Assembly (NCBI RefSeq): GCF_037042905.1 | Contig: NC_087251.1 | Coordinates: 26,660,001-26,724,000, forward strand | Direction of reading: 5' to 3' | DNA from: Lytechinus pictus | Taxonomy: Eukaryota | Length of the DNA: 64,000 nucleotides | In this document: piece by piece, positions 1,668-53,174 of the stretch | Layout of the letters: each line of letters begins with the position of its first letter | Numbering within the stretch: position 1 is the first letter of the stretch | Notes under the pieces: model-generated | Seen by the model: the letters and a program-made list of their open reading frames with translations, nothing else | Told to the model about the DNA's origin: nothing | The model's database searches: none | Made by a program: the position numbers and the translations under genes

Positions 1668-4600
1668 TCATTCACTTAGCCTCTGCTCGGGTGTCCCTGA
1701 TGATGCAGTTGTGACCGGTTGGACTGGTACAGGTTGGATTCCTCCTGGCATAGCTTGGGTCATGGGGTGGCCCTGCATTGGGAAAGGTACAGTAGGAAAT
1801 GGCTGATAATTGCTAACAGGGTACATTCCAGAAAGTTGCACACTCTGAGGGGGCATACGGGGGTGAACATAGAACATGGGTTGTTGGACAGGTGGGACCA
1901 TGCTTGAGGTAGTAGGGGCAATGACCATGCTAGGGTGGGTGAACATGTAAGGTAAGCCTGCCACAGGGGGTTGCCCAGGGACTGAGGATTGTTGGGATGG
2001 TACACTTGAGGTAGCAGTGGTTAGATTCGTGGATGTCTGCACTGCCTGCAGTTGTACTGCCTGCATCTGTTGTCTAAGGAGCCTCATTTCCTGCTGTTGC
2101 TGCAGAAGTAACTTCTGAAGGTCCATCTTTTCCATAGCCATGAATTCTTTGACATCATCTGGAAGGGACTCATCACTTGCCGAGGGCTGAGTAGAGAGGT
2201 TCGTCATAGAGCTTGATAACCCTGATGATTCCTTCAAGGATGAAGTTCTACTGACCCTACTATCAGGTAAGAATGCTTTGCTTTTCACATTGACACGCCC
2301 AAACAGTTTATCTTCCAGGCTTGCTGTACTTGCATGACCGTGCTTCCACAAAGGTTTATTACTTGAAATGATAGCATCAGGTTCAACAGATGAAGATATA
2401 TCAGAGAAACCAGAATCCATTCTTGGAATCACAGTTGTTGTCGACACATCAGACATGTCATTTTCAGATGAACTATCCTTGTCTGAAAAATCATCAGTAG
2501 AGCTTAGTGGGAAGAGACCTCTCTTAGCTACATATGACCGTTTCTTCTGTTTTCTTATCATCCTTGCTTGATTTGCCAGACTCGGGGACATATTCCAAGG
2601 AACATCTATTGTTGAAGCATCTGTTAATGTGGTATCAGTGTCCTCCCCTGCACAATCACTTTCATTAATCATGTTACGGACAGCAGTCCAATCAAAGTCA
2701 ATATTGGGACTAGATCTTGCTTTGCGTCTCTTTTCCCGCAGTCTTGCCTTAGCCTCCGAGTCCCTCAAAGTTATAGTGGAGTCATCTCTAAGGTTTGGAG
2801 CAGATTTTGTTTGAACGTGGATTGAACTCGTCCTTGCATCAACTAAGGAGTTCTGAGCTTTTATCACATTAAGAATACTTTGGGTTCGCTGGTGAATTTC
2901 CCTGAAACGAGTCAAGTGATTAGTGTCATCTGATTTAATCTTGTCTTCATCTGACCCACTAGACTTTTGTCTCATATTTTGTAACATTTCCTTTGTATCA
3001 TCTGTTGACTGATCAGACAAAATTTCAACAGTGTCTAGTAGTTCTTCCTCTGTCATTTGTGTCTTATGCAATTGACTTTTCTGGTTATCTGTGAAATCTG
3101 AAACAACTTCAGTCGGTTGCCCTGTCTCAACTGTGATCATCCCATTGTCTTCTGTTCCTACTGTAGTATCCTGATCTGTAGTTTCAGAAATAGCACTCAC
3201 ACCATTTGGTGAAGAAGCAGATTTTGGGATAATTACTCCACTGGCTACCTGGGTGATACTAATGTCAGTATCAACAGGATTTCTGGACAATCGTCTGATA
3301 TTTTTCCTTGCCTGCATAATCAAGTTAAAATGTTCTTCTTCATGCTCATCCTCAACCTTTCTGGGTCTGGACTCATAGGCTTTACTTTTTTCTTCTGCTT
3401 CAGTTTTTTTCTTTTTCAATGCCTCTTTCCAGGGTACATTAGTAGACGAGTTTGCTTTTGTGTTATCAGTGTTTGCATCTTTCATTTTACTCTCAGATGC
3501 AGTTTTAACCTTGGTAGTTTTCAGCTTGACATCTTTCCATGGTACAGATACTTTTTCATCTGTTTCTTGCTTTTTTTTAGTTTGTGGAACTGAACTGGAA
3601 ATCTTATTGTCATCTGTTTTCTCATTGCTTTTCCGCTTCATCAACGAATCTTTCCACCACACCTCAGATTTAGCTTCATCAGTTTTGATTGGGTCATTGT
3701 AAGATTTCTTGGCATCAAATGAAGTCTTCTTTTTAAGTACATCCCTCCATGGACTGGCGACATCTGAACCTGCAGGCATGGTTGAACTTGTCAGTTGTCT
3801 GGGTTTCTCTTCAACTTTATCCTTCAAAGCCACATGAGTTTGGTCAGGCCTTACTTTCGGCAACCTTTTTGATGCTCTACTTAAGTTTTCTGATTCGGGC
3901 TGCATTTTATCTTGTCCGAACATATTAAGTGTGCTTCTGACCATACTGCGACTTGCAAGCTTAGCCAGTTCTTTTTGGTCCTGTGTGAGAGGTTTCCCTG
4001 TGCTACTGTGTTCTTGGGTATGTGTTCCCCTATTGTTTCTACTCTTCAGAACATCCCATCCACTCTGCTTTTCTTTTGCTGAGGGTGGTGTCTCAGGAGA
4101 GCTGCCTGCTATCTCAATATTTTTTCCTCTGTCAATTGTATTGTCTTTACTTGTAATTGTGAAATCTGAAACTATTTCATTAGCTCCAGTCAACAGGACA
4201 TGCCTTTGCTCACGGTCCGTGTCTTGTTGTATGTCGGGTGATATTCTGCACTCTTTCCTTGTGTGAATGTTTGGTGTGGTGCTTTTATTTCCGTCTTGTA
4301 TTGTTGATTGAACCATGTCTACTTTCCCTGACAGAATGTCTGGTTCAGTAGTTTCATCTTGTTTTGCAGATATAGGCGAGTGCCCTCTTTCAGACATGGC
4401 ATGCATGAACTCAGAATCGTCTAGTGTATCTTGTTCCACCATTGCTTGGAGCTTGTCTTCATCATTTTCTTTTTTATTTTCTATATTTTCAGTGACATCC
4501 TCTGATACATTGTGATCAGTTTCCTCTTCCATGTGCAAGCTAGCTTCAAACAATATTCCACTTTTGTGTTCAGTCCGTGTATTCTCAAATTCTGTTTTAT

Positions 4601-7600
4601 CATTCATCTCCTCACTTTCAACCGAGTTGCCCATCTCAGTATCCTGTCTGTGATTACCTGTATCAATGGGAGCCCCCATTAAATGAGACAATCCTTCCCG
4701 CAGCATTCTCCGATTATCGACAGACCTGTCACGTTTCAGTATCGCAGCACCTTTAGCCATGTCAAGGGCAAGAGATGTGCCAGATCCACTTCTCTTATCA
4801 ATATCTTTCAGCGAGATTGACTTTCTCCGAACATAAGGCAGGTCTTCTTCCTGTTGCAATGCACTTTGACCATCAATGTCAAGCACTTCTACTGGAAAAG
4901 AAGCATCCTGTCTAGTATTTTCAGTCCTATTTGTAACATTTTCGTTTGGTTTGGTTTCTTTGACCTCTCTTTTGATAGATGCGACCTCCATAGTTTTGCT
5001 AACCACTGTTCCAGTTTCTCTCGAGGCTTTCATAGTCCGCGAATCATCTGATAAATCTCCAGAGATGTTACTCGATGGAATATTACCTGTAGAATATTCT
5101 CGCAGGATTTCTCCAAGAAGGGAGTCACCAGATGTTTCTGATTGCCATTTCTCTGATTCCACTTTTTTTTTTGGAGAATCTCCAGTTGGTAAAATAACAT
5201 CTGGTTCATCTTCTCCAGTAATAACATCCAGTCCTAAAGTCATGTTATGAGGCGTTGGTTGGTGCACCTCAACAGGTTGGTTAATAGGCACATAAGCTTC
5301 TGCAGAGACAGGCTCTTCGGATTGGTCAGTTTCAGCAGCAGAAGCACTAACACGTTTGGGTTTAGGGGGTGGTGCACCATATGGGAGTGGCATGCTCTTC
5401 ACAACTTCATAAATTTCATGCATATTTTCATGATGAATGCTATCTTCTTCATCAACACCAACTGGCAGAGCAGTTGATGATGATGAAGAGGGACAAAAAT
5501 CAGGTAGAGGTTTGACAGACAACACACGTGCACTCGCATTCAAAGGGGAGGGTTGTGCAGACTGAGGGTGCTCACATGAAACTTCACCAACAGTGGAACT
5601 TACCGTGACTTTTTCTGTTGCTGGCATCTCTATCCTAGGAATCTTGTCCTGTGGCACTGAGGCTGGAGACGTTGTCGATTTCGATGCTGTTACTGGCACA
5701 GGCTCAAGTGATGTAGTTGATGGCCAAGAACATTCTGAGATGGAATCATGAGATAATGAAGCTGGTCTTTCTGCTGGAGGTAAAGGGGCTCTCCTCTTCT
5801 TGTTTCTGCTCTTTGGTACTTCTACTGTTTCTGCTGCTGCTTCTGGTGACCTTGGAAGAAATTCTGCCCTAGAGTACTGTGAGGGTACTGTGACTTGTTG
5901 GGATGGTGCGGCATCTGTCCTGCTTTGAAGTTCCGATAGAGGCTTGCGCTGTTCGTCGCTGGGTCTCCCTTCTGCAGCTTCAGCCGGAATTTCCAGCATG
6001 ACATCACGCGGCTTCCTCTTGCCTCCAAATAATTTGCCAAGACCTCTTCTCTTTGCTTTGTCACTAGAATCTTTATGTTTTCCTCCAGACTTCCAATGAG
6101 GCGAACTCGTTCCTGCAGCTCCTGGTACCTCATCATCATTTGCATTATTATTGTGATTCTCTTGTACTTCAACATCATCTGAATTGTTGTTGTTAACATT
6201 TAGGATATTGCTATTGTTATTATTTGAGTTTGGGTTTTCTTCTTTATCATCTTTATCTGAATCTGAATCAAGTCCAATTGCTTCCTTGACTTTTGAGAAA
6301 AAACCTTCTGAATCGGAGGAAGAACTTGAAGATGATGAAGATTCATTACCTATCCCAATGGCTCCAAGTAAACTGAATCCAGATTTTTTCTCTTTCTTGG
6401 CTTTCTTCTTCTTTTTCTTTTCTTTCTTTCCCCCACCTACACCAAGGCTACCTCCAATGCTAACGCCACCCCCAGGCATATCTACATTGATACCAGCACC
6501 TGCATCACCACCTGCCGAGATATCTGCGCCCACAGTGCCATCACCACCAATGGATGCAGAAGGAATGTTGGAAGATAAATCACCCTCAGTACTAACGTCT
6601 CCACCTAGGCCTAACTTCACATCACCCTTTCCTTCTGCATCAACACCACCGATGCCGAGGCTGCCACTGCCAATACCTCCGATTCCACCTCCAAATCCTC
6701 CCATGTGCATATTAGATTCTCCCCCAATGCCCCCTTGGCCATCAATACTGATGTCTGGCTTGTCAACATTGGCATCTACGTCTACTCCTCCTGATCCACC
6801 AAGACCTCCTCCAAGGCTACCACTCAGTCCTCCTCCGCCCATGCTGAAGTCTGGTTTATCAACATTAGCCTCAACATTTATTCCTCCTCCGCCAATGCCG
6901 AATCCTCCTCCTGATGAGCCAATTTCTGGTTTTTCAGCATTAGCATCTATATCTAGTCCTCCACTTAGGCCTCCTCCAAGGCTAACGTCTGGTTTTCCAA
7001 CACTAGCATCTAGGTCTGCTCCTCCTCCCATACTGAAATCTGGTTTGTCAACATTAGAACTAATATCTAGACTTCCATCTCCACCCATATCTCCTCCGAT
7101 TCCAATTTTACCTCCTACATCAGCATCAGGTTTTGGAATATCTACTTCAGCATCTCCTCCTCCAAAGCCAAAACCAAAACCAAATCCTTTACCCTTCTTT
7201 TTCTTCTCCTTTTTAGATTTTTTCTTTCCTTCTGAGTCGCTGGAATCTGAACTGCTAGAACTGCTGGAACCATCCTTAGATTTGCCAAAGCCAAATCCAA
7301 AACCAAATTTTCCTTTTTTATCAGCATCAGCATCAGCATCTCCACCCAGGTCACCGCCTCCTCCAATGCTAACATCTGGTTTATCAACAGAAATTCCTCC
7401 TCCCAGTTCACCTCCTCCTCTTAGGTTGATGTCTGGTTTTCCAACACCAGCATCTACTCCTCCACCCAGACCTCCAAATTCTCCTCCAAGGTTGATGTCT
7501 GGTTTTCCAACATTAGCATCTACGTCTACTCCTCCTGATCCACCAAGACCTCCTCCAAGGCTTCCACTCAGTCCTCCTCCGCCCATGCTGAAGTCTGGTT

Positions 7601-10600
7601 TATCAACATTAGCCTCAACATTTATTCCTCCTCCGCCAATGCCGAATCCTCCTCCTGATGAGCCAATTTCTGGTTTTTCAGCATTAGCATCTATATCTAG
7701 TCCTCCACTTAGGCCTCCTCCAAGGCTAAGGTCTGGTTTTCCAACACTAGCATCTAGGTCTGCTCCTCCTCCCATACTGAAATCTGGTTTGTCAACATTG
7801 GCATCTACGTCTACTCCTCCTGATCCACCAAGACCTCCTCCAAGGCTTCCACTCAGTCCTCCTCCGCCCATGCTGAAGTCTGGTTTATCAACATTAGCCT
7901 CAACATTTATTCCTCCTCCGCCAATGCCGAATCCTCCTCCTGATGAGCCAATTTCTGGTTTTTCAGCATTAGCATCTATATCTAGTCCTCCACTTAGGCC
8001 TCCTCCAAGGCTAATGTCTGGTTTTCCAACACTAGCATCTAGGTCTGCTCCTCCTCCCATACTGAAATCTGGTTTGTCAACATTAGAACTAATATCTAGA
8101 CTTCCATCTCCACCCATATCTCCTCCGATTCCAATTTTACCTCCTACATCAGCATCAGGTTTTGGAATGTCTACTTCAGCATCTCCTCCTCCAAAGCCAA
8201 AACCAAAACCAAATCCTTTACCCTTCTTTTTCTTCTCCTTTTTAGATTTTTTCTTTCCTTCTGAGTCGCTGGAATCTGAACTGCTAGAACTGCTGGAACC
8301 ATCCTTAGATTTGCCAAAGCCAAATCCAAAACCAAATTTTCCTTTTTTATCAGCATCAGCATCAGCATCTCCACCCAGGTCACCGCCTCCTCCAATGCTA
8401 ACATCTGGTTTATTAACAGAAATTCCTCCTCCCAGTTCACCTCCTCCTCTTAGGTTGATGTCTGGTTTTCCAACACCAGCATCTACTCCTCCACCCAGAC
8501 CTCCAAATCCTCCTCCAAGGTTGATGTCTGGTTTTCCAACATTAGCATCTACGTCTACTCCTCCTGATCCACCAAGACCTCCTCCAAGGCTTCCACTCAG
8601 TCCTCCTCCGCCCATGCTGAAGTCTGGTTTATCAACATTAGCCTCAACATTTATTCCTCCTCCGCCAATGCCGAATCCTCCTCCTGATGAGCCAATTTCT
8701 GGTTTTTCAGCATTAGCATCTATATCTAGTCCTCCACTTAGGCCTCCTCCAAGGCTAAGGTCTGGTTTTCCAACACTAGCATCTAGGTCTGCTCCTCCTC
8801 CCATACTGAAATCTGGTTTGTCAACATTGGCATCTACGTCTACTCCTCCTGATCCACCAAGACCTCCTCCAAGGCTTCCACTCAGTCCTCCTCCGCCCAT
8901 GCTGAAGTCTGGTTTATCAACATTAGCCTCAACATTTATTCCTCCTCCGCCAATGCCAAATCCTCCTCCTGATGAGCCAATTTCTGGTTTTTCAGCATTA
9001 GCATCTATATCTAGTCCTCCACTTAGGCCTCCTCCAAGGCTAATGTCTGGTTTTCCAACACTAGCATCTAGGTCTGCTCCTCCTCCCATACTGAAATCTG
9101 GTTTGTCAACATTAGAACTAATATCTAGACTTCCATCTCCACCCATATCTCCTCCGATTCCAATTTTACCTCCTACATCAGCATCAGGTTTTGGAATGTC
9201 TACTTTAGCATCTCCTCCTCCAAAGCCAAAACCAAAACCAAATCCTTTACCCTTCTTTTTCTTCTCCTTTTTAGATTTTTTCTTTCCTTCTGAGTCGCTG
9301 GAATCTGAACTGCTAGAACTGCTGGAACCATCCTTAGATTTGCCAAAGCCAAATCCAAAACCAAATTTTCCTTTTTTATCAGCATCAGCATCTCCACCCA
9401 GGTCACCGCCTCCTCCAATGCTAACATCTGGTTTATCAACAGAAATTCCTCCTCCCAGTTCACCTCCTCCTCTTAGGTTGATGTCTGGTTTTCCAACACC
9501 AGCATCTACTCCTCCACCCAGACCTCCAAATCCTCCTCCAAGGTTGATGTCTGGTTTTCCAACATTAGCATCTACGTCTACTCCTCCTGATCCACCAAGA
9601 CCTCCTCCAAGGCTTCCACTCAGTCCTCCTCCGCCCATGCTGAAGTCTGGTTTATCAACATTAGCCTCAACATTTATTCCTCCTCCGCCAATGCCGAATC
9701 CTCCTCCTGATGAGCCAATTTCTGGTTTTTCAGCATTAGCATCTATATCTAGTCCTCCACTTAGGACTCCTCCAAGGCTAATGTCTGGTTTTCCAACACT
9801 AGCATCTAGGTCTGCTCCTCCTCCCATACTGAAATCTGGTTTGTCAACATTGGCATCTACGTCTACTCCTCCTGATCCACCAAGACCTCCTCCAAGGCTT
9901 CCACTCAGTCCTCCTCCGCCCATGCTGAAGTCTGGTTTATCAACATTAGCCTCAACATTTATTCCTCCTCCGCCAATGCCGAATCCTCCTCCTGATGAGC
10001 CAATTTCTGGTTTTTCAGCATTAGCATCTATATCTAGTCCTCCACTTAGGCCTCCTCCAAGGCTAATATCAGCATCTCCACCCAGGTCACCGCCTCCTCC
10101 AATGCTAACATCTGGTTTATCAACAGAAATTCCTCCTCCCAGTGCACCTCCTCCTCTTAGGTTGATGTCTGGTTTTCCAACACCAGCATCTACTCCTCCA
10201 CCCAGACCTCCAAGTCCTCCTCCAAGGCTGATCTCTGGTTTTCCAACATTAGCATCTATGTCTACTCCTCCCCCACCAAGGGATCCTCCTATTCCAATTC
10301 CTCCTCCAAGTTTAGTGTCTGATTTGGCTCCTCCACCTTCCACATCAATCTTGGGTTTTGGAATGTCTACTTTAGCATCTCCCTTTCCTCCTCCTCCAAA
10401 GCCAAAGCCAAATCCAAATCCTTTTTTACCCTTCTTCTTTTTCTTCTTTTTGGATTCTTTTTCTTCCGAGTCACTGGAATCAGAACTGCTGCTTGAGGAA
10501 CTGCTAGAACTGCTGGAACCATCCTTCTTAGATTTGCCAAAGCCAAAACCAAATCCGAATCTTCCTTTCTTATCTTTCTTTGCTCCAATGTCTGGCCTGT

Positions 10601-28793: not shown

Positions 28794-28890
28794 TTTATCA
28801 TCACCACCACCATCATTATCATCACCATCATCATCATCATCACCACCATCATTATCAACATCATCATCATCAATCATCATCACCATCATT
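28794..28890. repeat. Imperfect (CAT)n/(CAC)n microsatellite
   Basis: Directly visible. Confidence 0.9.
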
Positions 28891-29837: not shown

Positions 29838-29872
29838 TACACACACACACACACACATACACACACACACAC
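29838..29872. repeat. (CA)n microsatellite
   Basis: Directly visible. Confidence 0.9.
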
Positions 29873-32800: not shown

Positions 32801-33496
32801 CAATTGAAATGGCGAATTGAAGAAAAAAAAAATTCCTTCTTGTTGAAATATATGAGTTGGAACCCCCACATTACTAAGAAATAAACAGTTCAATAGTTCA
32901 GTTCGATGAATCCTTTGTGAATTGTGAAAGCAAATTAATCGTAGAAATTTGAGTGGGTAGTTTCATTACTTGCTGTTTCGTAAAAAAAAAAGAAGCATCA
33001 CGAGAAAACAAGATGCACCAGAGTGAAAAACACTTTCGCTTTTCAAAAGATATTTATCTTTGGTATTTTTCCTTAGATTCTCATTCATATTTGGTAGCAA
33101 AACATATTGGGGAAGAACCAATGGTTCACTCACTCTAGCAAAATAAAAGTTATATTTACGACGACCTTTTCTGATTCGAAAAAAATGAAACAACATTAGG
33201 ACAGTCTCATACAGTATACTTGAACTTCGGAAACTCTTTAACAAACTTTACTTCTGTGTTTACCGAACCCCTTCTTTGGGCCTCGTCCAAATATTTCTCC
33301 ATATTGCTGCAGTACGCACCATAGATTTTTATATGAACGACATTGAAAAGAGACCTCTACATCGTGTGGAACCAAATACTTTTTTTCAGACCCACCATAA
33401 CTCAACCATCTGATACTACACACGGGTCAAATGGGAGTCACTTTCTTCTGGTGACTATCGTGAAGGACAACTTTTTATTATTACCCCACCCCATAC

Positions 33497-33536
33497 CTAT
33501 CAACATGGATCCTACTAGGAGGATCCATGCTATCAA
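33497..33536. mobile_element. 26-bp palindromic insertion with a 7-bp direct repeat; probable DNA transposon (P-superfamily-like) excision footprint
   Basis: CTATCAA|CATGGATCCT actagg AGGATCCATG|CTATCAA. Confidence 0.55.
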
Positions 33537-36500
33537 CGATCCCAACATCCTTATAGCAATACAACACCCAATATCTCATATCAAGCCTTAGACATGTTAG
33601 AAGACCTTAAATAAACGATGGGCGTGTTCTTGACAAAGGGTTTTATATACAGCCAGATGAAAAAGTGACATCGCTTATGAAATGGTGAAATTATTCGATT
33701 ACATATTGAGGATTTTTGCGAATTCCAACTTTAATATCGTCCCTGAATCCAAACATGAACTTGAGCACCCTCCCTTTCATACAATTAATCCTTAACATTG
33801 CGGGCATGTAACATAGGTCCCCATTATTGTCTATCTTATTGCTAAATCATGGTAATGGATGCTGAAGCCACTACTCGACATGTCGGATAGTGGCTTCAGC
33901 GGCACAACATCACAAGAACCAAGATTGAGACTGAAGATCCCCTCCAACTCTCTAACATGGCTTTTGTATCAATAAGAATATACTGTATTAGATTATGAAT
34001 AATCACAACAGATATCATGACAGCCCAGGCATTGAACCTGAAGGCTGACATATGCTTCGGGGCAGTCAAAAAATTACCAGGGTCCAAAACTTCCCTGGTG
34101 AGACACATCACTCGCTTCGGTCACCTCCAATGCCCCCTGCGAAGCGTTAAACCATATTTGGTAATGGTCACAAACTGCGTTCAAAAATGTTAACCTGGTA
34201 ACGCTGGAGACACAACCGGCTAATTAATCGCGTATAGAGGAGACACTTGAATTGCACATTTCAGCGATTTATATCAAAATTGTTGACACAATTTGAATTT
34301 TCTCATCTTTTTTCCGTCTCCGTAGTTTCTTGACTGCGTATGAAAGGTGTTTGGTCACGACAGCTGTGTTTACATCTGAATTTAAAAGGTGACCTAATAA
34401 TAAGCTTTACTATTGTCACCATGCATGTAGGACAAAGAGATTTCAACTTAAGACATGAACTTGTCGAAGCCGGAGTCCTCCATACAGAGAGTCTGACCAT
34501 CGGGTGCATCCTCAGGACATATATATGTTAATTCATAGTATGTTCTCACAGACAAGATGTTTCAATATCACCCGAGACCATGAATAACTAACTACTCAAA
34601 TACACATTCAAGAGGCGTCATACGACCAGGAATTAATCAACCCAATTACCAAAATGACCGTATACGCACCGCAGGTGGGGGGGGGGGGGGTGTCCTTCCC
34701 CCCCGACCATGCCATACCATTCCATTCTAACTGTGCATCATAACCTTCAATTTCAATTTAAAATTACCCAACATGCATCAGTAACAGATAACCTTATCGT
34801 ATATAGTAAATCAATTAACGAAATGGATGCGATCATAAATATATATAAATATTTTAATATTTCTGTTGTGAGTGCAAAGTAACGTAAATCATATGGATTA
34901 AACAAACTTTCCAAGGGAAAACGATATCATCCCTTGCAGCGCAGCTGTACCAGTTTATGGAATTGGTTTACTTGAACACGTGGAGTCTTGTCATCTGCAG
35001 CAATGGCTGGTGACCCTTTTTCTCGTAGCCATTGTGTTCGCTGGTCAGACTATTGATTGGGGAAATCAGAAAATAATGAAAAAATGGCAATCCTGTTTTT
35101 CGCAGGGACTCCGTGGTCAGAGATCTAACAATGATTTCATGAGTGGTATTGATCGTGGGGATAAAAGGCGTGCCCTATCTTACGCGTTGTCGGGCATCAC
35201 GACTCGGCGAGTGGGAGCACATTACGCAATTTTTTTTTAACTCGAATTCTCTGAAACGGAATATCCCGTGGCGTATTGATCCAACGTCTTGCCCAAAACG
35301 GCTTAGCCAATGGACTGAATAAATGGGCAAGTATATAGATGATCATCTTGCAGAAATGGAAGAAGCCTCCACCATTCAGTAGTTTACAGCTTCCGAGAAT
35401 TGACATTTTCAAATATTTTACTCGCTCAAATATTTCACATTCTAGACTGTTTTTTTTTTATTTCTTGGCAATATAGGACAATAAAACCAAGAGTATAGAG
35501 CTTTACAGTTAGAATGCAATTCTAAGTATTCTAAAGAATTAAATGTATCGTATCATCGACCGTGAGTGGCTAAAAATGGGAGTAGGATGCGCACTTCGAG
35601 TAAATATAATTGAAGGATTTAGAATGAGAATTCACTGAATGAAAAGATTTAATGTGGAAAATGAAGACGTAAGATCTGAGTATGCTGAGGGCGAATAAAA
35701 GAAAACTATTCTAAATTTCACAAACTAGTTAAAACGCCGTCAGAAATGGGCGTAAACACATATAACGTCATTTTATCTCTACAGCAAGGCCAACAGTAAA
35801 AAGCAAAGGCATATTGATACAAAAAGAGAATATTGGACGGGCCTATCGGAGCAAGCGAGCATCCACCCCCCCCCCTCGATCACTTTTTATGTTGTGAGAT
35901 ATGTGGCTTCTAAAAAATATCACACTAGCCAGATATTCATCCCAATTCTAACCAAATTACGTTGAAAATTATCATATTCATTCTGTAAACCCAACAGGGA
36001 AAACATATAGATTTTGTGATCATTTAGGGGGCAGTCGCCCCCGCAAGTTAGTGCACATAAGCCTACAAACATGGAAAACCATCATCATCGCTAACACCAA
36101 CAGGTTAACTCAAGTCCAAATGAGGCTAGAAACGACATTTCCTGTTTTATCTCCTGTGACTGTCAATTAATGAATAAAGATATATATTTAAATATCAAGA
36201 AGAATCAAAGGTACCATGACTACCCATGAGAATAACAAAAAATAAAGTAAAAACATAGTTTTGAAATACAGGGCCAGAAAGGGCGGTTAAATATTGAAAA
36301 TAAAGAGCTGGTTTTTATTTTCTTTTATTTGTATTTTTTTACTTTCTTCAAATAGACGAAAAAACTTTTAATGAAAGTTGCCAGCGAGGAAAGCCAAACA
36401 GATAAAAAGTATTTCCCCACGATACTGTTCTAAATCTTGCAAGAAAATATCATAAATCAATTAGATATCAACGAAAATTTAAGGCGGTTGTATTTCTAAA

Positions 36501-37314
36501 TAAATACAATATTTTTGAAAACAAATCTAAATATACACGAGATAATTTTGTGGGCCTCTCTAGCCATCCCACCCTCCTCTCTCGAAAAGAAACGCAAGAA
36601 GGCCAGTTAGTATCGCCGTAAGTCTAAGTCAAGTTAGTTTTGAGAGGCGGGCTGGTAAAATAAAAAGGACTGATAAAGATTTAACAAACTTGATGACATA
36701 AAATACAATAAAATCGGAATTATTTCGTTGACACAAGCAATCCTAATATTCGTAAGGTTGGTTCGTTTACCCTTGCAATCTCGACTTCGCGATAAAACGA
36801 GATGTGAACAACAGAGTGGAATGCCATACAAATTAAACCTTAAGGAGCTGAGCCTAGGAATACACCTAGAACAAGATAGGGGGAGATAATAACTAATCAA
36901 ACAATCTTGGTCAAATATCAGTAGTTCTATGTCAAATGTGAAGAATCTTTGGTGGAATTTCCGTTGGCTTATCACAATGTTAGTCGGTAATAAAGATGTA
37001 AATTCACAAACACCGATTTGTTTTTGCGTTCGCAATCTACCGTAGACATACAGAGGGTGCTCTTTCTCTTTTCCGAAACGAAATTATATAGACAATTCAT
37101 TTTTAATTTGAAATTTGCAATATCAAATCAGATTTTACTAAGACCTTACCTGGCCAACTATAAGTTGATACCTAGGTCTATTCCAACCATTGTATGAAAT
37201 AAATTTGTGTACTTTATTCTCTACATCCTATGTATAAATCCCAATGTGTCTTCAAAACAGAATTTGCAAGATCTACCTTTATTTTGAATATCGTTTAATC
37301 AGGATGATTCTTAA

Positions 37315-37842
37315 AGGGATTCTCCAGGCTGAAAATAATATGATTTAAGGAATAACAAAGTAAAGATTTGCATAATTCCGATGAAACAGTTCTAGGCATG
37401 TCTTCATGAATATTCAATGAGCAAATTGATGATGTCATATCCCCAGGCCACTGGTTTCTTTTTTTTTATTGTGTGAAATTATATTTATTCAATTTTTTCT
37501 ACCAAGAACTTGAAAAAAATGGATTGGCAACTGATAAAGTGCATTAGATATCCATTGCGGCAATTAAGTACATTATAAAGGAAACACTTTATTCACACAT
37601 GTACGAAAAAATGAAACAATCGCGATATCGTGTAATAACATAAGAAAAGGGGAAGTTGGGTGTGACATCATCAGCCCATCTAATGAATATTCATGACGAC
37701 GTGCATGAAACTATTCTCACAAAATATTTCTCAACTTTAAAATTCAATAACTTCGTTATTTTTTTTCCGATTTTGATGAAATTTTCAGCATTTTGCTCGG
37801 TGAATTTTACTTCATTTATTCATATATAAATATTTCCAGCCT
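37315..37842 (-). mobile_element. Diverged TTAA-flanked Kolobok-like MITE, inverted relative to the 39442 copy
   Basis: TTAA|agggattctccaggctgaaaat ... tttccagcct|TTAA. The central region matches the reverse complement of about 39630-39840. Confidence 0.75.
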
Positions 37843-38067
37843 TTAAAAGACTAGAAACACTAATACACCCTGAATGGGCATGATAAAGATAGTTAAAGAA
37901 GCTTCCTTCGAAAAGAAATTGGTCTTGATTGTGCAGAAAGTAAAATTAGAATTTAGAATACAATGAAAAAAATGCCCCTTTTACTGAATTAAGAAAAAAA
38001 TGAAGTCACCATTATTAGGTCGTTGCCTTATCTACCGAAATACCATGGTGTCGGCGTGTCGCCCCTG

Positions 38068-38166
38068 AGTAGTAGTAGTAATAGTAGTACTAGTGCTATT
38101 ATTATTATTAGTAGTAGTAGTAGTAGTAGTAGTAATAGTAGTGGTGGTGGTGGTAATAGTAGTAGT
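38068..38166. repeat. Imperfect (AGT)n microsatellite
   Basis: Directly visible. Confidence 0.9.
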
Positions 38167-39441
38167 TCTCTACTCTTCAAGGATATCTCGAGGAATATTT
38201 TTACAAAGTCAACGAGAAACTATTGGAATATTCTCAACTCTACAATGGTTATCCTCTACACAACAATCCCAATTAACCAAGGTCAACCTACGTAAAAATC
38301 GTCAAACGATCAACAAATAACAAGAAGCTTATAGAATAGCAAACGCGTTAAAAGGGCATCGTCTCCACTCTATTGGGTCACTTGAGGACACCATCAGTGT
38401 CTGGAGAGGTCATGTGAGGACATCCTCTATTACGTAATGGTTACCGCGAACGCAACACCCAGAGGCATCGAAGGTCGGCTGATGAAATGGATACCTCGTA
38501 ATCAGGAGATAGAGAGGGGAAAGAGAGGGAGAGCAAGGGGCTTGGCGAGCTGCTGGATGATAATCCTTCGGTGGGCGATTGTCTCGAGTACAAAGGTCAA
38601 ATAAGGACAGCTGGCAAGTCATAACTATAGTATTAGGATACATGTCATGGCATGACGAAATGGACCATCCCCGCAAGGTAGATCGTTGTAGAACCTTCGG
38701 GAGGCGAACAGGGAATGTTCACCCGTGGATGTAAGGTTATTGGACTAGAGGCCTACTGTACACATATATAGGTTCACAACATTAGGTTATCTTCTTCATT
38801 CAGTAATTCCATTGGAAACTGGGGAAATAATTTATGGACGAATTCTCGGAATTCAAAATCAGGAAAACCTTACTAATCTCTATTAAGCTCATAGTCTGTA
38901 GACACCAGTTCTCACCACTGTTTAATTCTCATTTATGATGTAATTATTTCATAAAGATAACGAAGGTCCATTGTGAATAGAAATCTACAGCATCTATCAT
39001 AAATGAAAAGGACAATGCAAATAAAGATTTACGACGTGTCTGACGGGTCGTACTGGAGTGGTGAGGGAGATTGCTGTCACTCGCGTGTAACTTGTCCTCA
39101 AAATGGTGTAGTTAGCACGCTCTCAAATTGAACTTATCGCCTCCGGCAATTCTATTTTCTCTCCCCTTTTTATCCCACCTCTTTCCCTCTCTTTTCCAAA
39201 GGAATTCGGAAACCACCAAGCAAGCCAGTTTTGACCCACTATTGTTCCAGTGACACGGTCATGCAAGGTCGTATAGGAAAACAAGATTCGGGAGCTAAAT
39301 GTTCTTGCCTTGGGTCAAGTGTGTGTGAAGATGCCAATTTGAGACTGATCGCCAGGCAGGCAAAGGTAAGTGGAAGGAAGGGGTGGTAATGCTTTTTCTT
39401 CACATCAAATTACCTGGTTTTCATTAAGAAAGAAATCTTAA

Positions 39442-40024
39442 AGGGATGGTCCGGGCTGAAAATATTCATATCTTATTACATAGAGTAGAATTCACTGAGC
39501 AAAATGCCGACAATTTCATCAAAATCGAATAAAAAAATAATAAAGTTATTGAAGTTTATAATTCAGCAATATTTTGTGAAAACAGTCGTCATGAATATTC
39601 ATTAGGTGGGCTGATGATGTCACATCCCCACTTTCCGTTTTCTTATGTTATTACATCAAATCGTATTTTTTTCATTATTTCATACTTGTGTGAATAATAT
39701 GTCTCCCTTGTAATGAAATAAGTTGCAGCAATAAATATTTAATGCACTAAATCAGTTGTCAATCCAATTTTTCTAGTTCTTGGAGGAAAAAATTTGAATA
39801 AACCTTATTCCATATAATAAAATACAAAAGAACAAGTGGGGATGTGACATCATCAGCCCACCTAATGAATATTCATGACGACTGTTTTCACAAAATATTG
39901 CTAAACTTTAAAATTCAATAACTTTGTTATTTGTTATCCGATTTTGATGAAATTTTCGGCATTTTGCTCAATGAATTCTACTCTATTTATTAAGCTATAA
40001 ATACTTTCAGCCCGGACCATCCAT
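39442..40024 (+). mobile_element. 583-bp TTAA-flanked MITE with ~190-bp terminal inverted repeats (Kolobok-like)
   Basis: TTAA|agggatggtccgggctgaaa ... tttcagcccggaccatccat|TTAA. Arms 39442-39631 and 39835-40024 are nearly reverse-complementary. TTAA target duplication with RR..YY termini is the Kolobok signature (the right end has one substitution). Confidence 0.85.
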
Positions 40025-41246
40025 TTAATGACGTAGCAGTACTACTATCGACAAAGGGGACATACAAAGATCCAATTTATACTAAATTTCACACTTGGAT
40101 ATTGATGTCTAGGCTTATTTTGGTTATGAATATTGAGAGGGAATATGCCATTCGAGCCTGCTTTTGATCGGTCCTGGTTTAACGCTTTGAATGAAATAGT
40201 TCGTTCACTCGTATTTTTTGAATAAGTTGAATAACCTTTTAATTTCATAAATTTTACACGAAATTCTTATACCATTGTCAAATTGGAATTCGATTATAAT
40301 TGATAATACTAGTGGAAGATCAAAAGATAGCAAGAGAAGAGTTTTTATTCATCCCTAAAGCGCATTGGCAGACCAAAACAAACTTTCTTACTCTAGCATG
40401 CATGGAGAGGGGCGCTCCTAAATAAAACCAGGGAGTTGTTGTTTCCCACCCTCCTACATCTGAACAAATCTGAGGTCATAGGTCACAGAGCCAGCCCAAG
40501 AAGGACGGCAAGATGAAGTGTCGAAGGATGTCTCCTAACTCATCTGTCTGACCCCAAACTCCGACCTCAGAATTCCTCCCGAATTGAAACTTGTTACCAG
40601 ACGTGACAGAAATAGATATTCCAGTTAAAGGTGAGAAATAACTTTTCAAGTGTCTTTTGGGTAGGAAATCACCATGGAAACACTGTTTGTATAGGAGTAA
40701 TCACTTGGCCAACACTCTCCGAAAAATAATGTTCAGTCAGAAAATTTGTATTTGTATCATTTTTGTGTGGTCTTGTACACCCAATCCTCTGAGCCTTTCA
40801 ACTATTTGGTGGTGATATGTGATCAATAAATTTTATACAGCTTGCACATTGCTATTTGCGCCTAAAGACTACTTCCGAAGAAGTAAAATTTTGAAGTACA
40901 GTGGTGAACGAAACAAGGATTTTATATGATTATAATCATATTGCAAAGTCCCCAAGTTTTGAAAAATTGATGAACTCTTTGGGAACAGAAAAGTGTTTGG
41001 TAACTTGTTCCAAGCAGTGCCTTCAGGGTGGCGATTATTGATATAATAGTATGCCATGCTAGGATCGGGGCCTAGGATTGTGCCGTTTCAGCGATCATAA
41101 TGTTTTTTTCAGTCTCAAAAAAAACTTTTTAATTGGCCACCTTGACTTTCAAATCGGTTACTCCTTTTCCAATTTCATTATCTATTATATTACATAATAT
41201 TACATTATGATAGGGTTGGTCAGTTGGCTCCAATAATCGCGTACTA

Positions 41247-41478
41247 TACTCTAAATTACAGGGATTTAAAATAAGTCCAGATGGACTGTAGCTAGGGACC
41301 AATCGATTTCTGAATTTAGTTTTAATCCTAACGACTTAAATTTAAATCTCAAATTATTTAAATTTAAATCTTTCGAGATTTAAAAATGAATCTTAAGGAT
41401 TCAAACTAAATCCGGAATTCGATTGGTCCCTAACTACAGTCCATGTGGACTTGTTTTAAATCCCTGTAATTTAGAGTG
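41247..41478. mobile_element. 232-bp hairpin MITE with (C)ACTCTAAA...TTTAGAGTG termini
   Basis: actctaaattacagggatttaaaataagtccagatggactgtagctagggaccaatcga is mirrored by tcgattggtccctaactacagtccatgtggacttgttttaaatccctgtaatttagagt. Confidence 0.8.
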
Positions 41479-43735
41479 ATATAGACCACACATTGCCATG
41501 CATTTTGGCTTATGTCGCCCTCACATATTTGAAATGACACCGAATGGAGGTAATGTGGGAAATTTAATGAAAGTAGGCCTTTATAAAATACAGAACCTAT
41601 GGGCCTACAATCATCCAATTTTATGCATCAGCGTGATCAGTAATAATTTCATTTCGGTTCATATCGCACTAGAATGACATAAGCCAGTTAACCAAAGACT
41701 GACAGAGAAGTGTGGAAGTACATAACACTATTAATTAGGCATGTACTGCTGCCTATAACTTAACCCCTTCAATGTTGTAAAACAAAATAATTAGCAGATT
41801 TAACGTGAAAGCACTTTAGGTGTGCAGAATGTGGCCATAATAACGCTGTTGGCGGTGAATAAATGATCATTCATTCATCATTCATAATAGAGGGGGTTTA
41901 CATTTAGAATACTATAAATCATTATTTCGCGTATGGAATGCCAATAAATATAATGTTCACACTCTATGATTATTGATGGACAATAACGGAATGAAAAGCG
42001 ATGTGTACCACCCAAGCACAGAACACGATTGATCATGCCCTGTGGATAGGATAAGCAGGCTTTTTGGTTTAACTTCTGAGCTTTTCATTCAGACTAAAAC
42101 AACATGTTCCATGGGAAAGTTACTTGATAGGAAGTTTTCTTTTTTCATGAATCCCGAGCTCTCGATTTGTTTTGCCTTTGACTTCATCATCTATCTTCAG
42201 CAAAAGTTTAGAGCAACTTGACTGGAAACCCTCCACGCCCCCTGGGTGCGTTATAATGCATCTTATGCCAACCCAGACACGTAACGTCAAGATACTTGGA
42301 GAGAAACTAAATAGATTCATGCCGAGGACGTACTTTCACGAATCTTTAAAATTTTCGTGTTTTTTTTTTCTACGTATAGGAAAACAAGTTAGCTTTAGTG
42401 AAAAAATAGAATTTAATTCTCTTTTGGACCGCGTGGAGCGAGGCCAACCTAATCCATAACCCCTTCGATCACGCTGTGCATTCATACTACACAAGCAAAC
42501 ATTCAACAAGTAGTAGCAGGCAGGGCGTGTCAATGGACCGTACCATTCATAATGAAGGGAGTTCGAAAGTATTGCTGTCGGAATCCTTCCAACTCCGCCT
42601 ACGGAAGTCAGTGTTTCTTTGAGTAAACATTTACTTAACATAACCCAAGATTTTATCTGATAATAGGGTATATCTGATTATCAAAATGTCTGCAAATTTT
42701 TGAACAAACAAGGCAAACCCATTTCTGTTGCAATTTTGGGTACATACATACACCCCACAAATGGAAGTGTCCTGCGTGCTCAGTGGGTATGAAAGGCAAC
42801 TATTCTTCACAAACCGCAAAGAATAGATGAAGTCTTTTGAGTATTGCCAAAAAAGTATAATAGAGTGGGGGAATAGAAAACAACATCGCTTTTCACTGTG
42901 TATGCACAACCCAAGGCCAAAAATGGACGCCATTGTGGTGCTTTACGATACTTGAGATTGGAAGCCATCGACATTAAGTTTCTACGACATATATATACAA
43001 AGTTTTCCAGTGATGGTCCAAGAGTGGTATCTTTGATTATATCCGCCAGGAATATGCCCCCTCCCACCTTGCTCCTCACGTGCTACATAGTGTGGTATAT
43101 AGCATTCACAAAAGTTCTTTAAAAATACTTAGTAAAAATATAATAATGATTTTGCCTTAATATGCCCACAATGTATTCACAACATAACTTCCGCTGATAA
43201 TGTGTGCGCGCAAAAAGTTGTACCAAACTTTTAAACTAATAAACAGTTTGGTGAAATTTGTTTACGTACCTAAGCGAATAGAAGATGTTAAAGATCCCCG
43301 GCAGCACTGCATAATGGTTTCCAAAATGTTGGTATCATCGGAAAAGTGGCTTTGCGAGCCCCCACTCATATTGCACAAGATGGGATGGGCTTATCCCTCG
43401 GTATTGTGATCCTCGCTAAACCGCGACATTCCTTTTAACTGCTCAACTATAGGTCGCCCCAGCACTAATTACACAAAGCACCCATTTTCATTTCTCTTCA
43501 AATCGACTCTTTTTTCTGCTTGTGTGAAGCGAAGCGAGTCTTGTGAAGCACAACGTGAATTGAAAGTTTGATTGTGTCTAAGTCCAGACTCATCATGCAT
43601 AGGACCTTCAGTGGTTACATTTACCCCCCCCCCCTTCTCCTTTATCTATACACCCTATAAGCCATTGTGGTGGACCTCAGTAATCCCCGGATAAATTATA
43701 CTAAGGAATGGTGATGAAAATAGGATATTATTTAC

Positions 43736-44051
43736 CTCCTTCTGCGCTCAATCCTGCTCCCAGTCCGACGCCCACGCCCACTCCAGCCCCGGCACCAGCT
43801 GATGTGTCGATATCCATGTCGATGTTGGGCTTCTCGGCTTCCACACTGACATGTGCGCCCGCTTCGGCTCCTCGTCCTCCTCGTTGCTTACTTCGTCGTT
43901 CCCGGCCCGATCGACGAAATGAGTTCCGAAGAACACGATTGAAACTTAGCTTTCTCTTCTTCTTAGCAGGCTCCCCCGCCGCCACATCGGCATCCACAGA
44001 GGCTGACGCCGATGCCTCGACCGAAAAACTTGCCGAGGCTTTATTCCCCAT
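43736..44051 (-). CDS. First coding exon (105 codons + 1 nt): N-myristoylation signal MGNKAS and basic MARCKS-effector-like segment
   Basis: ATG in strong context (AGC ATG G) with an in-frame upstream TAA at 44081-44079. Donor GGA G|GTAAAT at 43735, phase 1, compatible with exon 28184. The peptide ends in EKPNIDMDID and GAGVGVG, matching the giant-exon style. Confidence 0.85.
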
Positions 44052-53100: not shown

Positions 53101-53174
53101 AGTTTCACAATCTCTTCCGCAAATAACCCCTTCGACAGATTACTTGCACAGAAAAGTCTAGACTAGACACTCAC

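What the first reader, a model, noticed from the sequence alone, without database searches (positions are those of the whole stretch)
1668..44051. A ~7,107-aa PDZ-less, N-myristoylated MARCKS/AHNAK-like hybrid giant protein assembled from four exons
Seen: three small exons (316+102+92 nt) splice in frame onto the 20.8-kb exon. The ORF track does not link them. An in-frame stop 30 nt upstream of the ATG fixes the N-terminus as MGNKAS, and no PDZ or other globular domain is visible in the chain. Known: vertebrate AHNAK, AHNAK2 and periaxin have small 5' exons encoding a PDZ-like domain followed by one giant repeat exon. Inference: this gene has the same exon layout and repeat vocabulary, but with a lipid anchor and basic switch in place of the PDZ and a candidate actin/SH3-binding tail. 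That suggests an undescribed membrane-to-cortex scaffold, either a distant AHNAK relative or a convergent one.
Basis: partly seen in the sequence, partly recalled or inferred. Interest (0 to 1): 0.88.

Follow-up and report, generated by a model that had tools for sequence, protein, structure and literature searches.

The report
Sea urchin AHNAK-like giant protein gene
This is a real, expressed sea urchin gene for a roughly 700 kDa relative of the vertebrate membrane scaffold AHNAK. It has a conserved lipid-anchor signal at its start instead of the usual PDZ domain, and a tail of its own. This suggests that the way these giant proteins attach to membranes has been swapped during animal evolution.

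Summary
Four minus-strand exons (44051-43736, 28184-28083, 23992-23901, 22481-1668) all have canonical splice sites. They join in frame to 7,107 codons, with an in-frame stop 30 nt upstream of the ATG.

RNA-seq reads and a transcript contig confirm the exon 2-3 and 3-4 junctions to the base.

The repeats are AHNAK-type. The top database hits are vertebrate AHNAK (E=0, 32% identity). A profile of the 113-aa unit aligns colinearly with fish, toad and Nematostella units, while reversed and shuffled controls score nothing.

No PDZ is present in the spliced chain or in any frame of the window. The start MGNKASAS...PAKKKRKLSF is conserved in three other taxa, each with a stop just upstream and a phase-1 donor.

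The 1,537-aa tail matches no AHNAK protein. It defines a small unnamed family with conserved PxxP motifs and two long helices. It includes a partial S. purpuratus model, LOC105441578.

"MARCKS hybrid" is an analogy only, and actin binding is unsupported. PDZ-less AHNAK-like giants, and one with a myristoylation-type start, also exist in other invertebrates.

Verdict: a new variant of a known kind, of moderate interest. Two other first-reader notes in this scan cover parts of this same stretch. None cover other DNA.

The parts
43736..44051 (-). Exon 1 (coding part, 316 nt): start codon, N-terminal anchor region and first repeat-like residues. It ends in a phase-1 donor, AAGGAG|GTAAAT.
   Evidence: Its 31-mers are held at a share of 1.00 in four RNA runs. 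It is conserved in P0001-P0003.
44079..44081 (-). In-frame TAA 30 nt upstream of the ATG, which fixes the N-terminus.
   Evidence: Equivalent stops lie 6 nt upstream of the ATG in L001 and L003.
44028..44051 (-). MGNKASAS: an N-myristoylation consensus (G2, N3, S6, no P7). It is invariant in four taxa.
   Evidence: The consensus rule is from established knowledge (PROSITE PS00008 type pattern). The modification itself is not shown.
43878..43970 (-). Polybasic Ser/Phe cluster PAKKKRKLSFNRVLRNSFRRSGRERRSKQRG, a candidate electrostatic membrane-binding and phospho-switch segment.
   Evidence: P28, A29, K31-R33, L35-F37 and R46-S48 are invariant in the 4-sequence alignment.
28185..43735 (-). Intron 1 (15.5 kb). 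The junction is inferred, not directly observed.
   Evidence: Canonical GT..AG. The transcript contig of X1 breaks 2 nt upstream of exon 2, at the 'AG' shared by the intron end and the exon 1 end.
28083..28184 (-). Exon 2 (102 nt).
   Evidence: joint 23992|28083.
23901..23992 (-). Exon 3 (92 nt).
   Evidence: joints 22481|23901 and 23992|28083.
1668..22481 (-). Exon 4 (20,814 nt including the stop): 6,937 codons of uninterrupted frame.
19392..22481 (-). Degenerate Gly/Asp/Lys repeats (spliced residues 171-1200), including 5.6 copies of a 153-nt unit.
13347..19391 (-). About 17 units of roughly 113 aa (339 nt). Each starts with a K-rich GFGFGLKMPKFGF cluster and ends with GPDVDIKGPKVEGDISGPDLDVSGPDLDI. 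These units are colinear with AHNAK repeat units.
10581..13346 (-). Degenerate repeats with a K-rich/FG/poly-Ser linker (residues 3216-4137).
7122..10580 (-). About 3.4 copies of a 343-aa (1,029-nt) super-repeat built from 95-aa subunits. Copies are up to 99-100% identical, so copy number depends on the assembly.
6282..7121 (-). Last repeats and the final K-rich/poly-Ser linker (residues 5291-5570).
1671..6281 (-). Non-repeat tail (1,537 aa, 3.9% Gly). It belongs to a small unnamed family and matches no AHNAK protein.
5763..5795 (-). RRAPLPPAERP: a class I SH3-type motif (RxxPxxP), in the conserved block KKRRAPxPP.
5352..5393 (-). MPLPYGAPPPKPKR: a class II SH3-type motif (PxxPxR). The PLP.G.PPPKPKR core is invariant in all six aligned tails.
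2811..2939 (-). Predicted long helix (..HLTRFREIHQRTQSILNVIKAQ..), with pLDDT 83-95.
2019..2129 (-). Predicted long helix and candidate coiled coil (DLQKLLLQQQQEMRLLRQQMQAVQ), with pLDDT 92-94. It is followed by a Pro/Gln/Met-rich end.

Best explanation
The window carries a real four-exon gene of a sea urchin close to, but not identical with, S. purpuratus. It encodes a protein of about 7,100 aa, about 702 kDa and pI about 4.7.

Shown: about 5,400 residues form a repeat array that shares unit order and anchor motifs with the central repeat units of AHNAK and AHNAK2, and with 'AHNAK-like' giants of cnidarians and arthropods. The protein therefore belongs to that repeat family by descent.

Shown: it differs at both ends. 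It has no PDZ domain. It starts with a conserved N-myristoylation consensus followed about 25 residues later by a conserved Lys/Arg/Ser/Phe cluster. It ends in a 1,537-aa tail that is largely predicted to be disordered and is unrelated to the AHNAK C-terminus. This tail carries two conserved SH3-type proline motifs, basic patches, two long helices and a Pro/Gln/Met-rich end.

Inferred mechanism:
- The myristate and the basic cluster hold the N-terminus on the inner leaflet of the plasma or vesicle membrane. Ser phosphorylation within RKLS and RRS could release it.
- The acidic Gly-rich array forms a long flexible chain. It is punctuated by about 33 basic/aromatic KMPKF/FGFG clusters, some flanked by poly-Ser acidic tracts. 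These clusters would give multivalent, reversible contacts with acidic lipids and partner proteins.
- The tail recruits SH3-domain proteins and may pair through its helices.
- Overall it would be a membrane-lining cortical scaffold working like AHNAK, with a lipid anchor in place of PDZ-mediated targeting.
For: Gene model:
- Canonical splice sites, an intact frame and an upstream stop.
- Two junctions match the proposed coordinates to the base in stranded reads and in a contig.
- Exon 1 is transcribed in the same libraries.

AHNAK-type repeats:
- 109 hits, led by vertebrate AHNAK at E=0, 1,193 bits, 32% identity and 99% coverage. AHNAK2 and invertebrate AHNAK-like proteins follow.
- A unit HMM scores 94-1,106 bits on 13 family members, and on none of 26 reversed or locally shuffled controls.
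- Alignments are colinear across whole units: KMPKF..FG..DVDV..P..DI.VK..GP..KGPK(V/I)EGD..PDLD..GPD.

No PDZ.

N-terminus:
- MGNKASAS and the PAKKKRKLSF block are invariant in four taxa at 46% mean column identity.
- Stops lie just upstream of the ATG, and a phase-1 donor follows, in every locus.

Tail:
- Five relatives only among 1.84 billion representative proteins.
- The same repeats-plus-tail layout occurs in L004 and L006.
- The conserved blocks include both PxxP motifs.
- AlphaFold2 gives mean pLDDT 46.6 with two confident helices for the last 520 aa, and 41.5 with no structure for two repeat units.

Anchor diversity in relatives: signal peptide plus transmembrane segment (read by eye from the N-terminal sequences) followed by PDZ in Nematostella, Acropora and Daphnia, and an MGNVES start in Armadillidium.
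Against: - The exon 1 to exon 2 splice was not observed directly. Intron 1 is 15.5 kb.
- A 214-nt N gap lies 2.9 kb upstream of exon 1, and sequence beyond the window was not examined.
- Myristoylation, membrane binding, phospho-regulation and SH3 binding are all inferred from motifs.
- The repeats are compositionally biased, so the very large scores overstate the evidence. The best single-unit scores are modest (22-38 bits).
- AlphaFold2 models are of low confidence and came from shallow alignments.
- A PDZ-bearing AHNAK paralogue elsewhere in this genome cannot be excluded.
- The 99-100% identical super-repeats make the exact length uncertain.
Confidence: 0.7

Rival explanations
1. Convergent repeat protein. 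The array arose independently in echinoderms and resembles AHNAK only because both were selected for the same alternating charged/hydrophobic, Pro/Gly-punctuated pattern.
For: Neither end of the protein is related to AHNAK. The repeats are low-complexity and evolve by rapid tandem duplication. Single-unit scores are modest.
Against: Several anchor motifs appear in the same order across the whole unit in sea urchin, fish, toad and Nematostella. Reversed and locally shuffled sequences of the same composition give no hit. The gene layout is shared: small 5' exons followed by one giant exon (PMC10682155). The family is spread from cnidarians to vertebrates, so inheritance is the simpler account.
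Confidence: 0.12
2. The 5' end of the model is wrong or is only a minor isoform. The main transcript would start at another first exon, in intron 1, in the N gap or beyond the window, possibly encoding a PDZ or a transmembrane anchor as in other invertebrates. The MGNKAS exon would then be an alternative first exon or a separate small gene.
For: Reading through the donor gives a possible stand-alone ORF of 107 aa. The X1 contig breaks exactly at exon 2, so at least two upstream contexts exist in that run.
Against: No PDZ-like or AHNAK N-terminus-like segment exists in any frame of the 64 kb. Exon 1 itself carries repeat vocabulary and is the best non-exon-4 match to the unit profile. Its phase-1 donor fits the phase-1 acceptor of exon 2. 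In other taxa, conservation stops at the equivalent phase-1 donor and the read-through tails differ. Exon 1 is present in the same RNA libraries. The contig break is also what unspliced pre-mRNA plus the exon 1 splice would produce, because both end in AG.
Confidence: 0.13
3. Assembly or annotation artefact. The giant ORF would be an expanded or collapsed repeat with no single protein of this length.
For: Near-identical 1,029-nt copies. Public protein sets hold no full-length echinoderm model, only a 1,728-aa S. purpuratus fragment.
Against: 20.8 kb of uninterrupted frame with strong strand-asymmetric composition. Spliced RNA enters the exon. The same repeats-plus-tail layout occurs on independent contigs from other samples.
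Confidence: 0.03

Closest known systems
AHNAK (desmoyokin) and AHNAK2 of vertebrates
   Same: Both are giant proteins of about 600-700 kDa, encoded mostly by one huge exon preceded by small exons. Both have a central array of units of about 110-165 aa. The anchor motifs KMPKF..FG, DVDV..P..DI.VK and KGPK(V/I)EGD..PDLD..GP appear in the same order (architecture from PMC10682155). K-rich/FG/poly-Ser modules resemble the extreme AHNAK C-terminus by eye.
   Different: The sea urchin protein has no PDZ domain. It has a myristoylation consensus plus a basic cluster at the start. Gly-rich GGGIGGG inserts raise Gly to about 26-31% in the repeat blocks. The 1,537-aa tail has no BLAST similarity to any of 109 AHNAK-family proteins.
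Predicted invertebrate 'AHNAK-like' proteins (Nematostella, Acropora, Daphnia, Armadillidium, Schistosoma, Dermatophagoides)
   Same: They share the repeat grammar. Armadillidium, Schistosoma and the mite also have no Pfam PDZ in their first 700 residues. The Armadillidium protein also starts with a myristoylation-type MGNVES.
   Different: The cnidarian and Daphnia proteins begin with what reads as a signal peptide and a transmembrane segment, followed by PDZ domains. None shares the MGNKASAS..KKKRKLSF start or the sea urchin tail.
S. purpuratus XP_011671119.1, 'uncharacterized protein LOC105441578' (1,728 aa)
   Same: It is orthologous to the last repeats and the tail. Identity is 70% over the tail and 86% over the last 520 aa, and the C-terminal end is nearly the same.
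   Different: It is a partial model that starts inside the last repeats. It has no N-terminus and no link to AHNAK in its name.
MARCKS, and Src-type 'myristate plus basic' membrane anchors
   Same: Both have an N-terminal Gly myristoylation consensus combined with a Lys/Arg cluster interspersed with Ser and Phe. This is the logic of a myristoyl-electrostatic switch (established knowledge; sequence).
   Different: There is no sequence relationship, and the Pfam MARCKS family does not hit. The basic cluster lies about 25 residues from the Gly, as in Src-type anchors, rather than about 150 as in MARCKS. The resemblance is functional analogy only.
Periaxin
   Same: Reported to share the PDZ type with AHNAK2 (PMC10682155).
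   Different: It has a PDZ at its N-terminus. Its repeats were not compared here.

Membership tests
AHNAK family (AHNAK/AHNAK2) | Central array of repeat units (about 128 aa in AHNAK, 165 aa in AHNAK2) with the characteristic motif order | tested here: met
   Top hits are vertebrate AHNAK at E=0. The unit HMM scores 94-1,106 bits on real proteins and nothing on 26 reversed or shuffled controls. Unit alignments are colinear.
AHNAK family (AHNAK/AHNAK2) | N-terminal PDZ domain | tested here: not met
   Pfam gives no hit at E<=1 on exon 1 and exon 4. tblastn of 24 family N-termini finds only a stop-ridden chance match. The PDZ HMM scores at best E=7 over six frames, and E=0.11 with a negative bit score on the spliced chain. 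Not covered: the 214-nt N gap and DNA outside the window.
AHNAK family (AHNAK/AHNAK2) | Gene layout: a few small 5' exons followed by one giant coding exon | tested here: met
   Exons of 316, 102, 92 and 20,814 nt. Two junctions are confirmed by RNA. The layout of AHNAK and AHNAK2 is taken from PMC10682155.
AHNAK family (AHNAK/AHNAK2) | C-terminal domain related to the AHNAK C-terminus (about 1,000 aa, with regulatory and partner-binding sites) | tested here: not met
   blastp of residues 5600-7107 against 109 family proteins finds no hit at E<=1. The last 300 aa of four AHNAKs gave only two weak hits (E 7e-5 and 1e-3, both from the shark protein), and these fall on the repeat array.
AHNAK family (AHNAK/AHNAK2) | Orthology shown by conserved synteny or intron position | not testable with these tools
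   No neighbouring gene was recognised in the window. No chordate or cnidarian genomic loci were available for comparison.
MARCKS family | Sequence membership (Pfam MARCKS model) | tested here: not met
   Exon 1 hits no Pfam family at E<=1.
N-myristoylated proteins (NMT substrates) | Met-Gly start with a small uncharged residue at position 3, Ser/Thr-type residue at 6 and no Pro at 7 | tested here: met
   MGNKASAS is invariant in four taxa, and the ATG is fixed by upstream stops. The consensus is met by sequence only.
N-myristoylated proteins (NMT substrates) | Actual lipid attachment in the cell | not testable with these tools
   This needs metabolic labelling or mass spectrometry.
Tail family (window, XP_011671119.1, P0005-P0008; unnamed) | Ordered conserved blocks: GKLFGxKK, YSPAEFLP, KKRRAPxPP, PLPxGxPPPKPKR, MAKEA..MARMMGV, RERTQSIL, STPNID, RKxKRKS, LDSGFSD, LQQQQEMRLLRQ, MPYMY..PMFY | tested here: met
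   phmmer E-values of 4.7e-46 to 3.3e-11. The blocks are seen in the sequences and alignments. No Pfam family hits any member at a significant level.

The most novel reading that the evidence does not exclude
AHNAK-type repeat arrays are an ancient metazoan membrane-lining module whose attachment device was exchanged repeatedly: a transmembrane segment plus PDZ in cnidarians and Daphnia, PDZ alone in vertebrates, and an N-terminal lipid anchor in sea urchins and, independently, in an isopod. The sea urchin gene would then define a distinct subfamily, present in at least three divergent marine animal lineages. This subfamily combines a conserved myristoyl/basic switch at one end with a conserved SH3-binding, helix-pairing tail at the other. 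Such a protein would bridge the membrane and the cortical signalling or cytoskeletal machinery without any globular domain.
Probability: 0.45. Interest if true: 0.6.

Novelty: new variant of a known kind. Interest (0 to 1): 0.45.

Why it matters
AHNAK and AHNAK2 are discussed almost entirely as vertebrate proteins. In the literature I could search, invertebrate relatives appear only as automatic names in omics tables. How the giant repeat array works at membranes is still unclear.

A sea urchin relative with the same repeat grammar but a lipid anchor in place of the PDZ would show two things. The array is the conserved functional core, and membrane tethering is the conserved requirement.

Sea urchin eggs and embryos are a classical system for plasma-membrane resealing and cortical dynamics, processes in which AHNAK is implicated in vertebrates. 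The gene would therefore give a tractable model for knock-down, G2A anchor mutants and live imaging of N-terminal and tail fragments.

The tail also defines a conserved motif-rich module that has no name in Pfam.

Tried and rejected
- A PDZ exon upstream of exon 1. The only tblastn lead (50453-50247, E=0.48) contains stop codons and is noise. The PDZ HMM over six frames gave only noise.
- Direct evidence for the exon 1-2 junction. The single read-laying run had to be spent on the 5.9-kb stretch covering exons 2-4. Exact searches for the 28-nt and 22-nt junction sequences in JGI metagenome contigs found nothing. There was no positive control, so this is uninformative.
- A profile search with the tail alignment. 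It returned nothing, not even the alignment's own members, probably because low-complexity words flooded the 8,000 scored candidates. It is uninformative.
- The ESM Atlas on the tail. Every score was below 0.75 and pointed only to disordered-protein families. No lead came of it.
- PDB sequence search with two repeat units. Only chance matches to beta-rich proteins.
- Rfam on the whole window. Nothing.
- Source organisms of the related contigs (GCA_014845345.1, GCA_013332995.1). No paper mentions them, so the taxonomic range of the N-terminal and tail families is unknown.
- Two literature searches were too broad to help.
- MARCKS homology is rejected.
- An actin-binding (WH2 or thymosin-like) reading of the PW(K/R)D..LKKK repeats in the tail was considered. 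I had no test for it, and it is left as speculation.

Full report
**Observation**

The minus strand carries an ORF from 22376 to 1668 (6,902 aa from its first ATG), and its open frame continues up to 22481. The region 6-22 kb has a strong negative GC skew on the + strand and higher G+C than its flanks. Each is bounded by AG and GT. Their lengths are 316, 102, 92 and 20,814 nt, which sum to 21,324 nt. They translate to 7,107 residues with one terminal stop. A TAA lies in frame 30 nt upstream of the ATG. The window has one N gap, at 46938-47151.

**RNA evidence**

I laid three stranded raw-read RNA runs and one contig set of the same species on 22400-28300.
- The joints are reported as 22480>23900 (cut +1) and 23990>28081 (cut +2), with ends CT..AC. 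These correspond to introns 22482-23900 and 23993-28082, with GT..AG on the minus strand.
- They are supported by 3 and 6 reads in X14, each set starting at several places. They are also supported by one 1,020-nt X1 contig of depth 202 that runs through exons 2, 3 and 4.
- First mates lie on the + strand, as expected for a minus-strand RNA in a standard stranded library.
- The X1 contig starts 2 nt upstream of exon 2. Those two bases (AG) are the only ones shared by the intron end (..GCAG) and the exon 1 end (..GGAG). A graph break there means at least two upstream contexts are present. Unspliced RNA plus the exon 1 splice would produce this, but it is not proof.

The tool's single call could not also cover the exon 1-2 junction. 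As a substitute I asked which runs hold exon 1. All sampled 31-mers are present in four RNA runs of the species, X1 included. The share is 0.89 in an oligo-dT marine metatranscriptome and 0.67 in a sister species. For comparison, X1 held 0.28 of the words of the intron-rich 5.9-kb stretch. Exon 1 is therefore transcribed in the same libraries.

**Is exon 1 the true start?**

A search with the 105 residues of exon 1 found three proteins from other organisms at 48-49% identity. All begin MGNKASAS, followed by an acidic Ala/Ser stretch and PA(K/A)KKR(K/R)LSF. The first eight residues and the basic block are invariant, while mean column identity is 46%.

In their genomic contigs, in-frame stops lie 6 nt upstream of the ATG, against 30 nt in the window. 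A strong donor in phase 1 ends the conserved part in each. Downstream of that donor the read-through translations are unrelated. Exon 2 must be entered in phase 1 for the confirmed exon 2-3-4 frame to stay open, so this fits.

Among all 1,950 six-frame segments of the window, the only ones outside exon 4 that touch a profile of the repeat unit are those containing exon 1 (E=0.0026), exon 3 and exon 2. I therefore accept the model, with the exon 1-2 splice marked as inferred.

**What the repeats are**

The protein is 22.7% Gly, 11.5% Asp and 9.8% Lys. Tandem Repeats Finder reports 15.8 copies of a 339-nt unit, 5.6 copies of a 153-nt unit and several 285-nt units. A 1,029-nt super-repeat is 99-100% identical between copies.

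Each 113-aa unit begins with KKKGKGGFGFGLKMPKFGF and ends with GPDVDIKGPKVEGDISGPDLDVSGPDLDI. Pfam recognises nothing.

A search with residues 1331-2830 of exon 4 gave 109 proteins.
- The best are vertebrate AHNAK, at E=0, up to 1,193 bits, 32% identity and 99% coverage.
- AHNAK2 comes next.
- Then come predicted 'AHNAK-like' proteins of Schistosoma, Daphnia, a mite, an isopod, Nematostella and Acropora.

Such scores can be inflated by composition, so I ran a control. I built an HMM from 17 sea urchin units and searched 13 family members together with their reversed versions and versions shuffled within 20-residue windows. The real proteins scored 94-1,106 bits, with best single units at 15-38 bits. 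None of the 26 controls was reported.

The unit alignments are colinear over about 105-110 residues. They share KMPKF..FG, DVDV..P..DI.VK, GP..KGPK(V/I)EGD(I/M)..PDLD(V/I).GPD in the same order in medaka, toad and Nematostella. This favours common descent of the unit over convergence.

**What is not AHNAK**

A review (PMC10682155) gives AHNAK an N-terminal part of 251 aa with a PDZ domain, central units of about 128 aa, and a C-terminal part of 1,002 aa. It gives AHNAK2 six small exons plus one giant exon, an N-terminal PDZ and 165-aa units.

Here no PDZ is found, by four tests:
- Pfam on the exons.
- tblastn of 24 family N-termini against the window, where the only lead has stop codons.
- A PDZ HMM against all six frames, best E=7.
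- The same HMM against the spliced chain.

The last 1,508 residues have no BLAST match at E<=1 to any of the 109 family proteins. Membership in the AHNAK family is therefore met for the repeat array and the gene layout, and not met for the PDZ and the C-terminal domain.

Pfam on the N-termini of the invertebrate relatives finds PDZ in Nematostella (two), Acropora, Daphnia and shark. It finds none in Armadillidium, Schistosoma or the mite. The cnidarian and Daphnia proteins start with what reads as a signal peptide and a hydrophobic transmembrane stretch. The isopod protein starts MGNVESRP. The attachment end is therefore variable across the family, and the sea urchin form is one more variant.

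**The tail**

An exhaustive phmmer search of the last 1,200 residues against 1.84 billion representative proteins found five relatives.
- One represents a cluster that includes S. purpuratus XP_011671119.1, 'uncharacterized protein LOC105441578', 1,728 aa. Its end is nearly identical to the window's. It is 70% identical over the tail and 86% over the last 520 aa. This places the window in a sea urchin related to, but distinct from, S. purpuratus.
- The other four are 23-36% identical and come from unnamed marine metagenome or run assemblies.
- In a TARA scaffold, the same Gly/Asp/Lys repeats with KGKGGFGLKMPK run into the tail. The two stretches lie in different reading frames either side of a run of N, and the tail's own frame still holds repeat sequence for about 900 nt before the tail begins.
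- In a Logan contig, the poly-Ser/Asn-rich linker runs in frame into the tail.
- In two others, the tail seems to start at an acceptor site of its own exon.

The alignment shows an ordered set of conserved blocks. They include KKRRAPxPP (class I SH3-type), an invariant PLP.G.PPPKPKR (class II SH3-type), MAKEA..MARMMGV, RERTQSIL, STPNID, RKxKRKS, LDSGFSD, LQQQQEMRLLRQ and MPYMY..PMFY.

No Pfam family hits any member at a significant level, and the ESM Atlas gives no usable lead. AlphaFold2 on the last 520 residues gives mean pLDDT 46.6. Two long helices are confident: residues 6685-6727 and 6955-6991 of the spliced protein. Two repeat units give mean pLDDT 41.5 and no secondary structure. With the caveat of shallow alignments, the chain shows no globular domain.

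**Mechanism**

Shown:
- A conserved myristoylation-type start, with a conserved Lys/Arg/Ser/Phe cluster 25-58 residues in.
- About 33 further basic/aromatic clusters along an acidic array of pI about 4.4-4.9.
- Seven poly-Ser/acidic tracts.
- Conserved PxxP motifs and helices in the tail.

Inferred, from established knowledge of myristate-plus-basic anchors (Src, MARCKS) and of AHNAK as a scaffold on the cytoplasmic face of the plasma membrane (PMC2171952, PMC10682155):
- The N-terminus is lipid-anchored to the inner leaflet and is releasable by Ser phosphorylation.
- The array lies along or hangs from the membrane, with many weak basic/aromatic contacts.
- The tail recruits SH3 proteins and may pair.

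'MARCKS-like' describes this logic only. There is no homology. I found nothing that supports actin binding.

**Prior knowledge and novelty**

In the library I could search, invertebrate AHNAK relatives appear only as automatic names.
- 'AHNK' is the top marker of the epithelial supra-cluster in a sea cucumber single-cell study (PMC11244903).
- An 'AHNAK-like' phosphopeptide, GPSLKGGADVEIPSGK, appears in sea cucumber intestine regeneration (PMC6037860).
- No paper mentions LOC105441578.
- The public protein sets searched hold no full-length echinoderm model.

The gene is therefore a new variant of a known kind. It has AHNAK-type repeats with a different, conserved attachment end and a different, conserved tail. 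It is not categorically new, and PDZ-less relatives exist elsewhere.

**Limits**

- The exon 1-2 junction is inferred.
- The N gap and DNA outside the window were not examined.
- Copy number in the near-identical super-repeats depends on the assembly.
- The organisms behind the related contigs are unknown.
- All biochemical properties are inferred from sequence.

Two other first-reader notes of this scan cover the N-terminal motif and the basic/aromatic clusters of this same stretch. My counts of 33-35 clusters are a little below the 'about 40' of the second note.

Noticed in passing
window 25550-26140 and 28239-28290: Pieces of interspersed repeats inside introns 2 and 1. They have very high RNA depth, many variant letters and loose ends on both sides in all runs. 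They match no Rfam family, and the element was not identified.
   Followed up: partly
window 6184-22323, + strand: Long + strand ORFs (up to 1,703 aa) overlap the giant exon. They are antisense shadows of the Gly/Asp/Lys codon bias, not genes.
   Followed up: partly
window 6900-9200: Copies of a 1,029-nt super-repeat are 99-100% identical. This implies very recent duplication or gene conversion, so the copy number, and the exact protein length, depends on the assembly.
   Followed up: partly
proteins P0086, P0108, P0058, P0065: Predicted AHNAK-like giants of Nematostella, Acropora and Daphnia start with what reads as a signal peptide and a transmembrane segment, followed by PDZ domains. The Armadillidium one starts with a myristoylation-type MGNVES and has no PDZ. 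The membrane-attachment end of this family appears to be interchangeable.
   Followed up: partly
window 44052-64000: No convincing coding ORF or recognisable gene lies in the 20 kb upstream of exon 1. The N gap is at 46938-47151. Nothing is available for a synteny comparison.
   Followed up: partly
window 43892 (exon 1, +160 from the ATG) and L001 +160: A second donor-like GTAAG/GTAAT in phase 1 sits at the same position in the window and in L001, inside the conserved RRS(K/N) codons. It is probably a by-product of the coding sequence, but it could be an alternative donor.
   Followed up: no
L005:421-5097 and protein P0006: In two distant relatives the tail begins right after a pyrimidine-rich stretch ending in CAG. 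It therefore seems to lie on its own exon, rather than being fused to the repeat exon as in the sea urchin.
   Followed up: no
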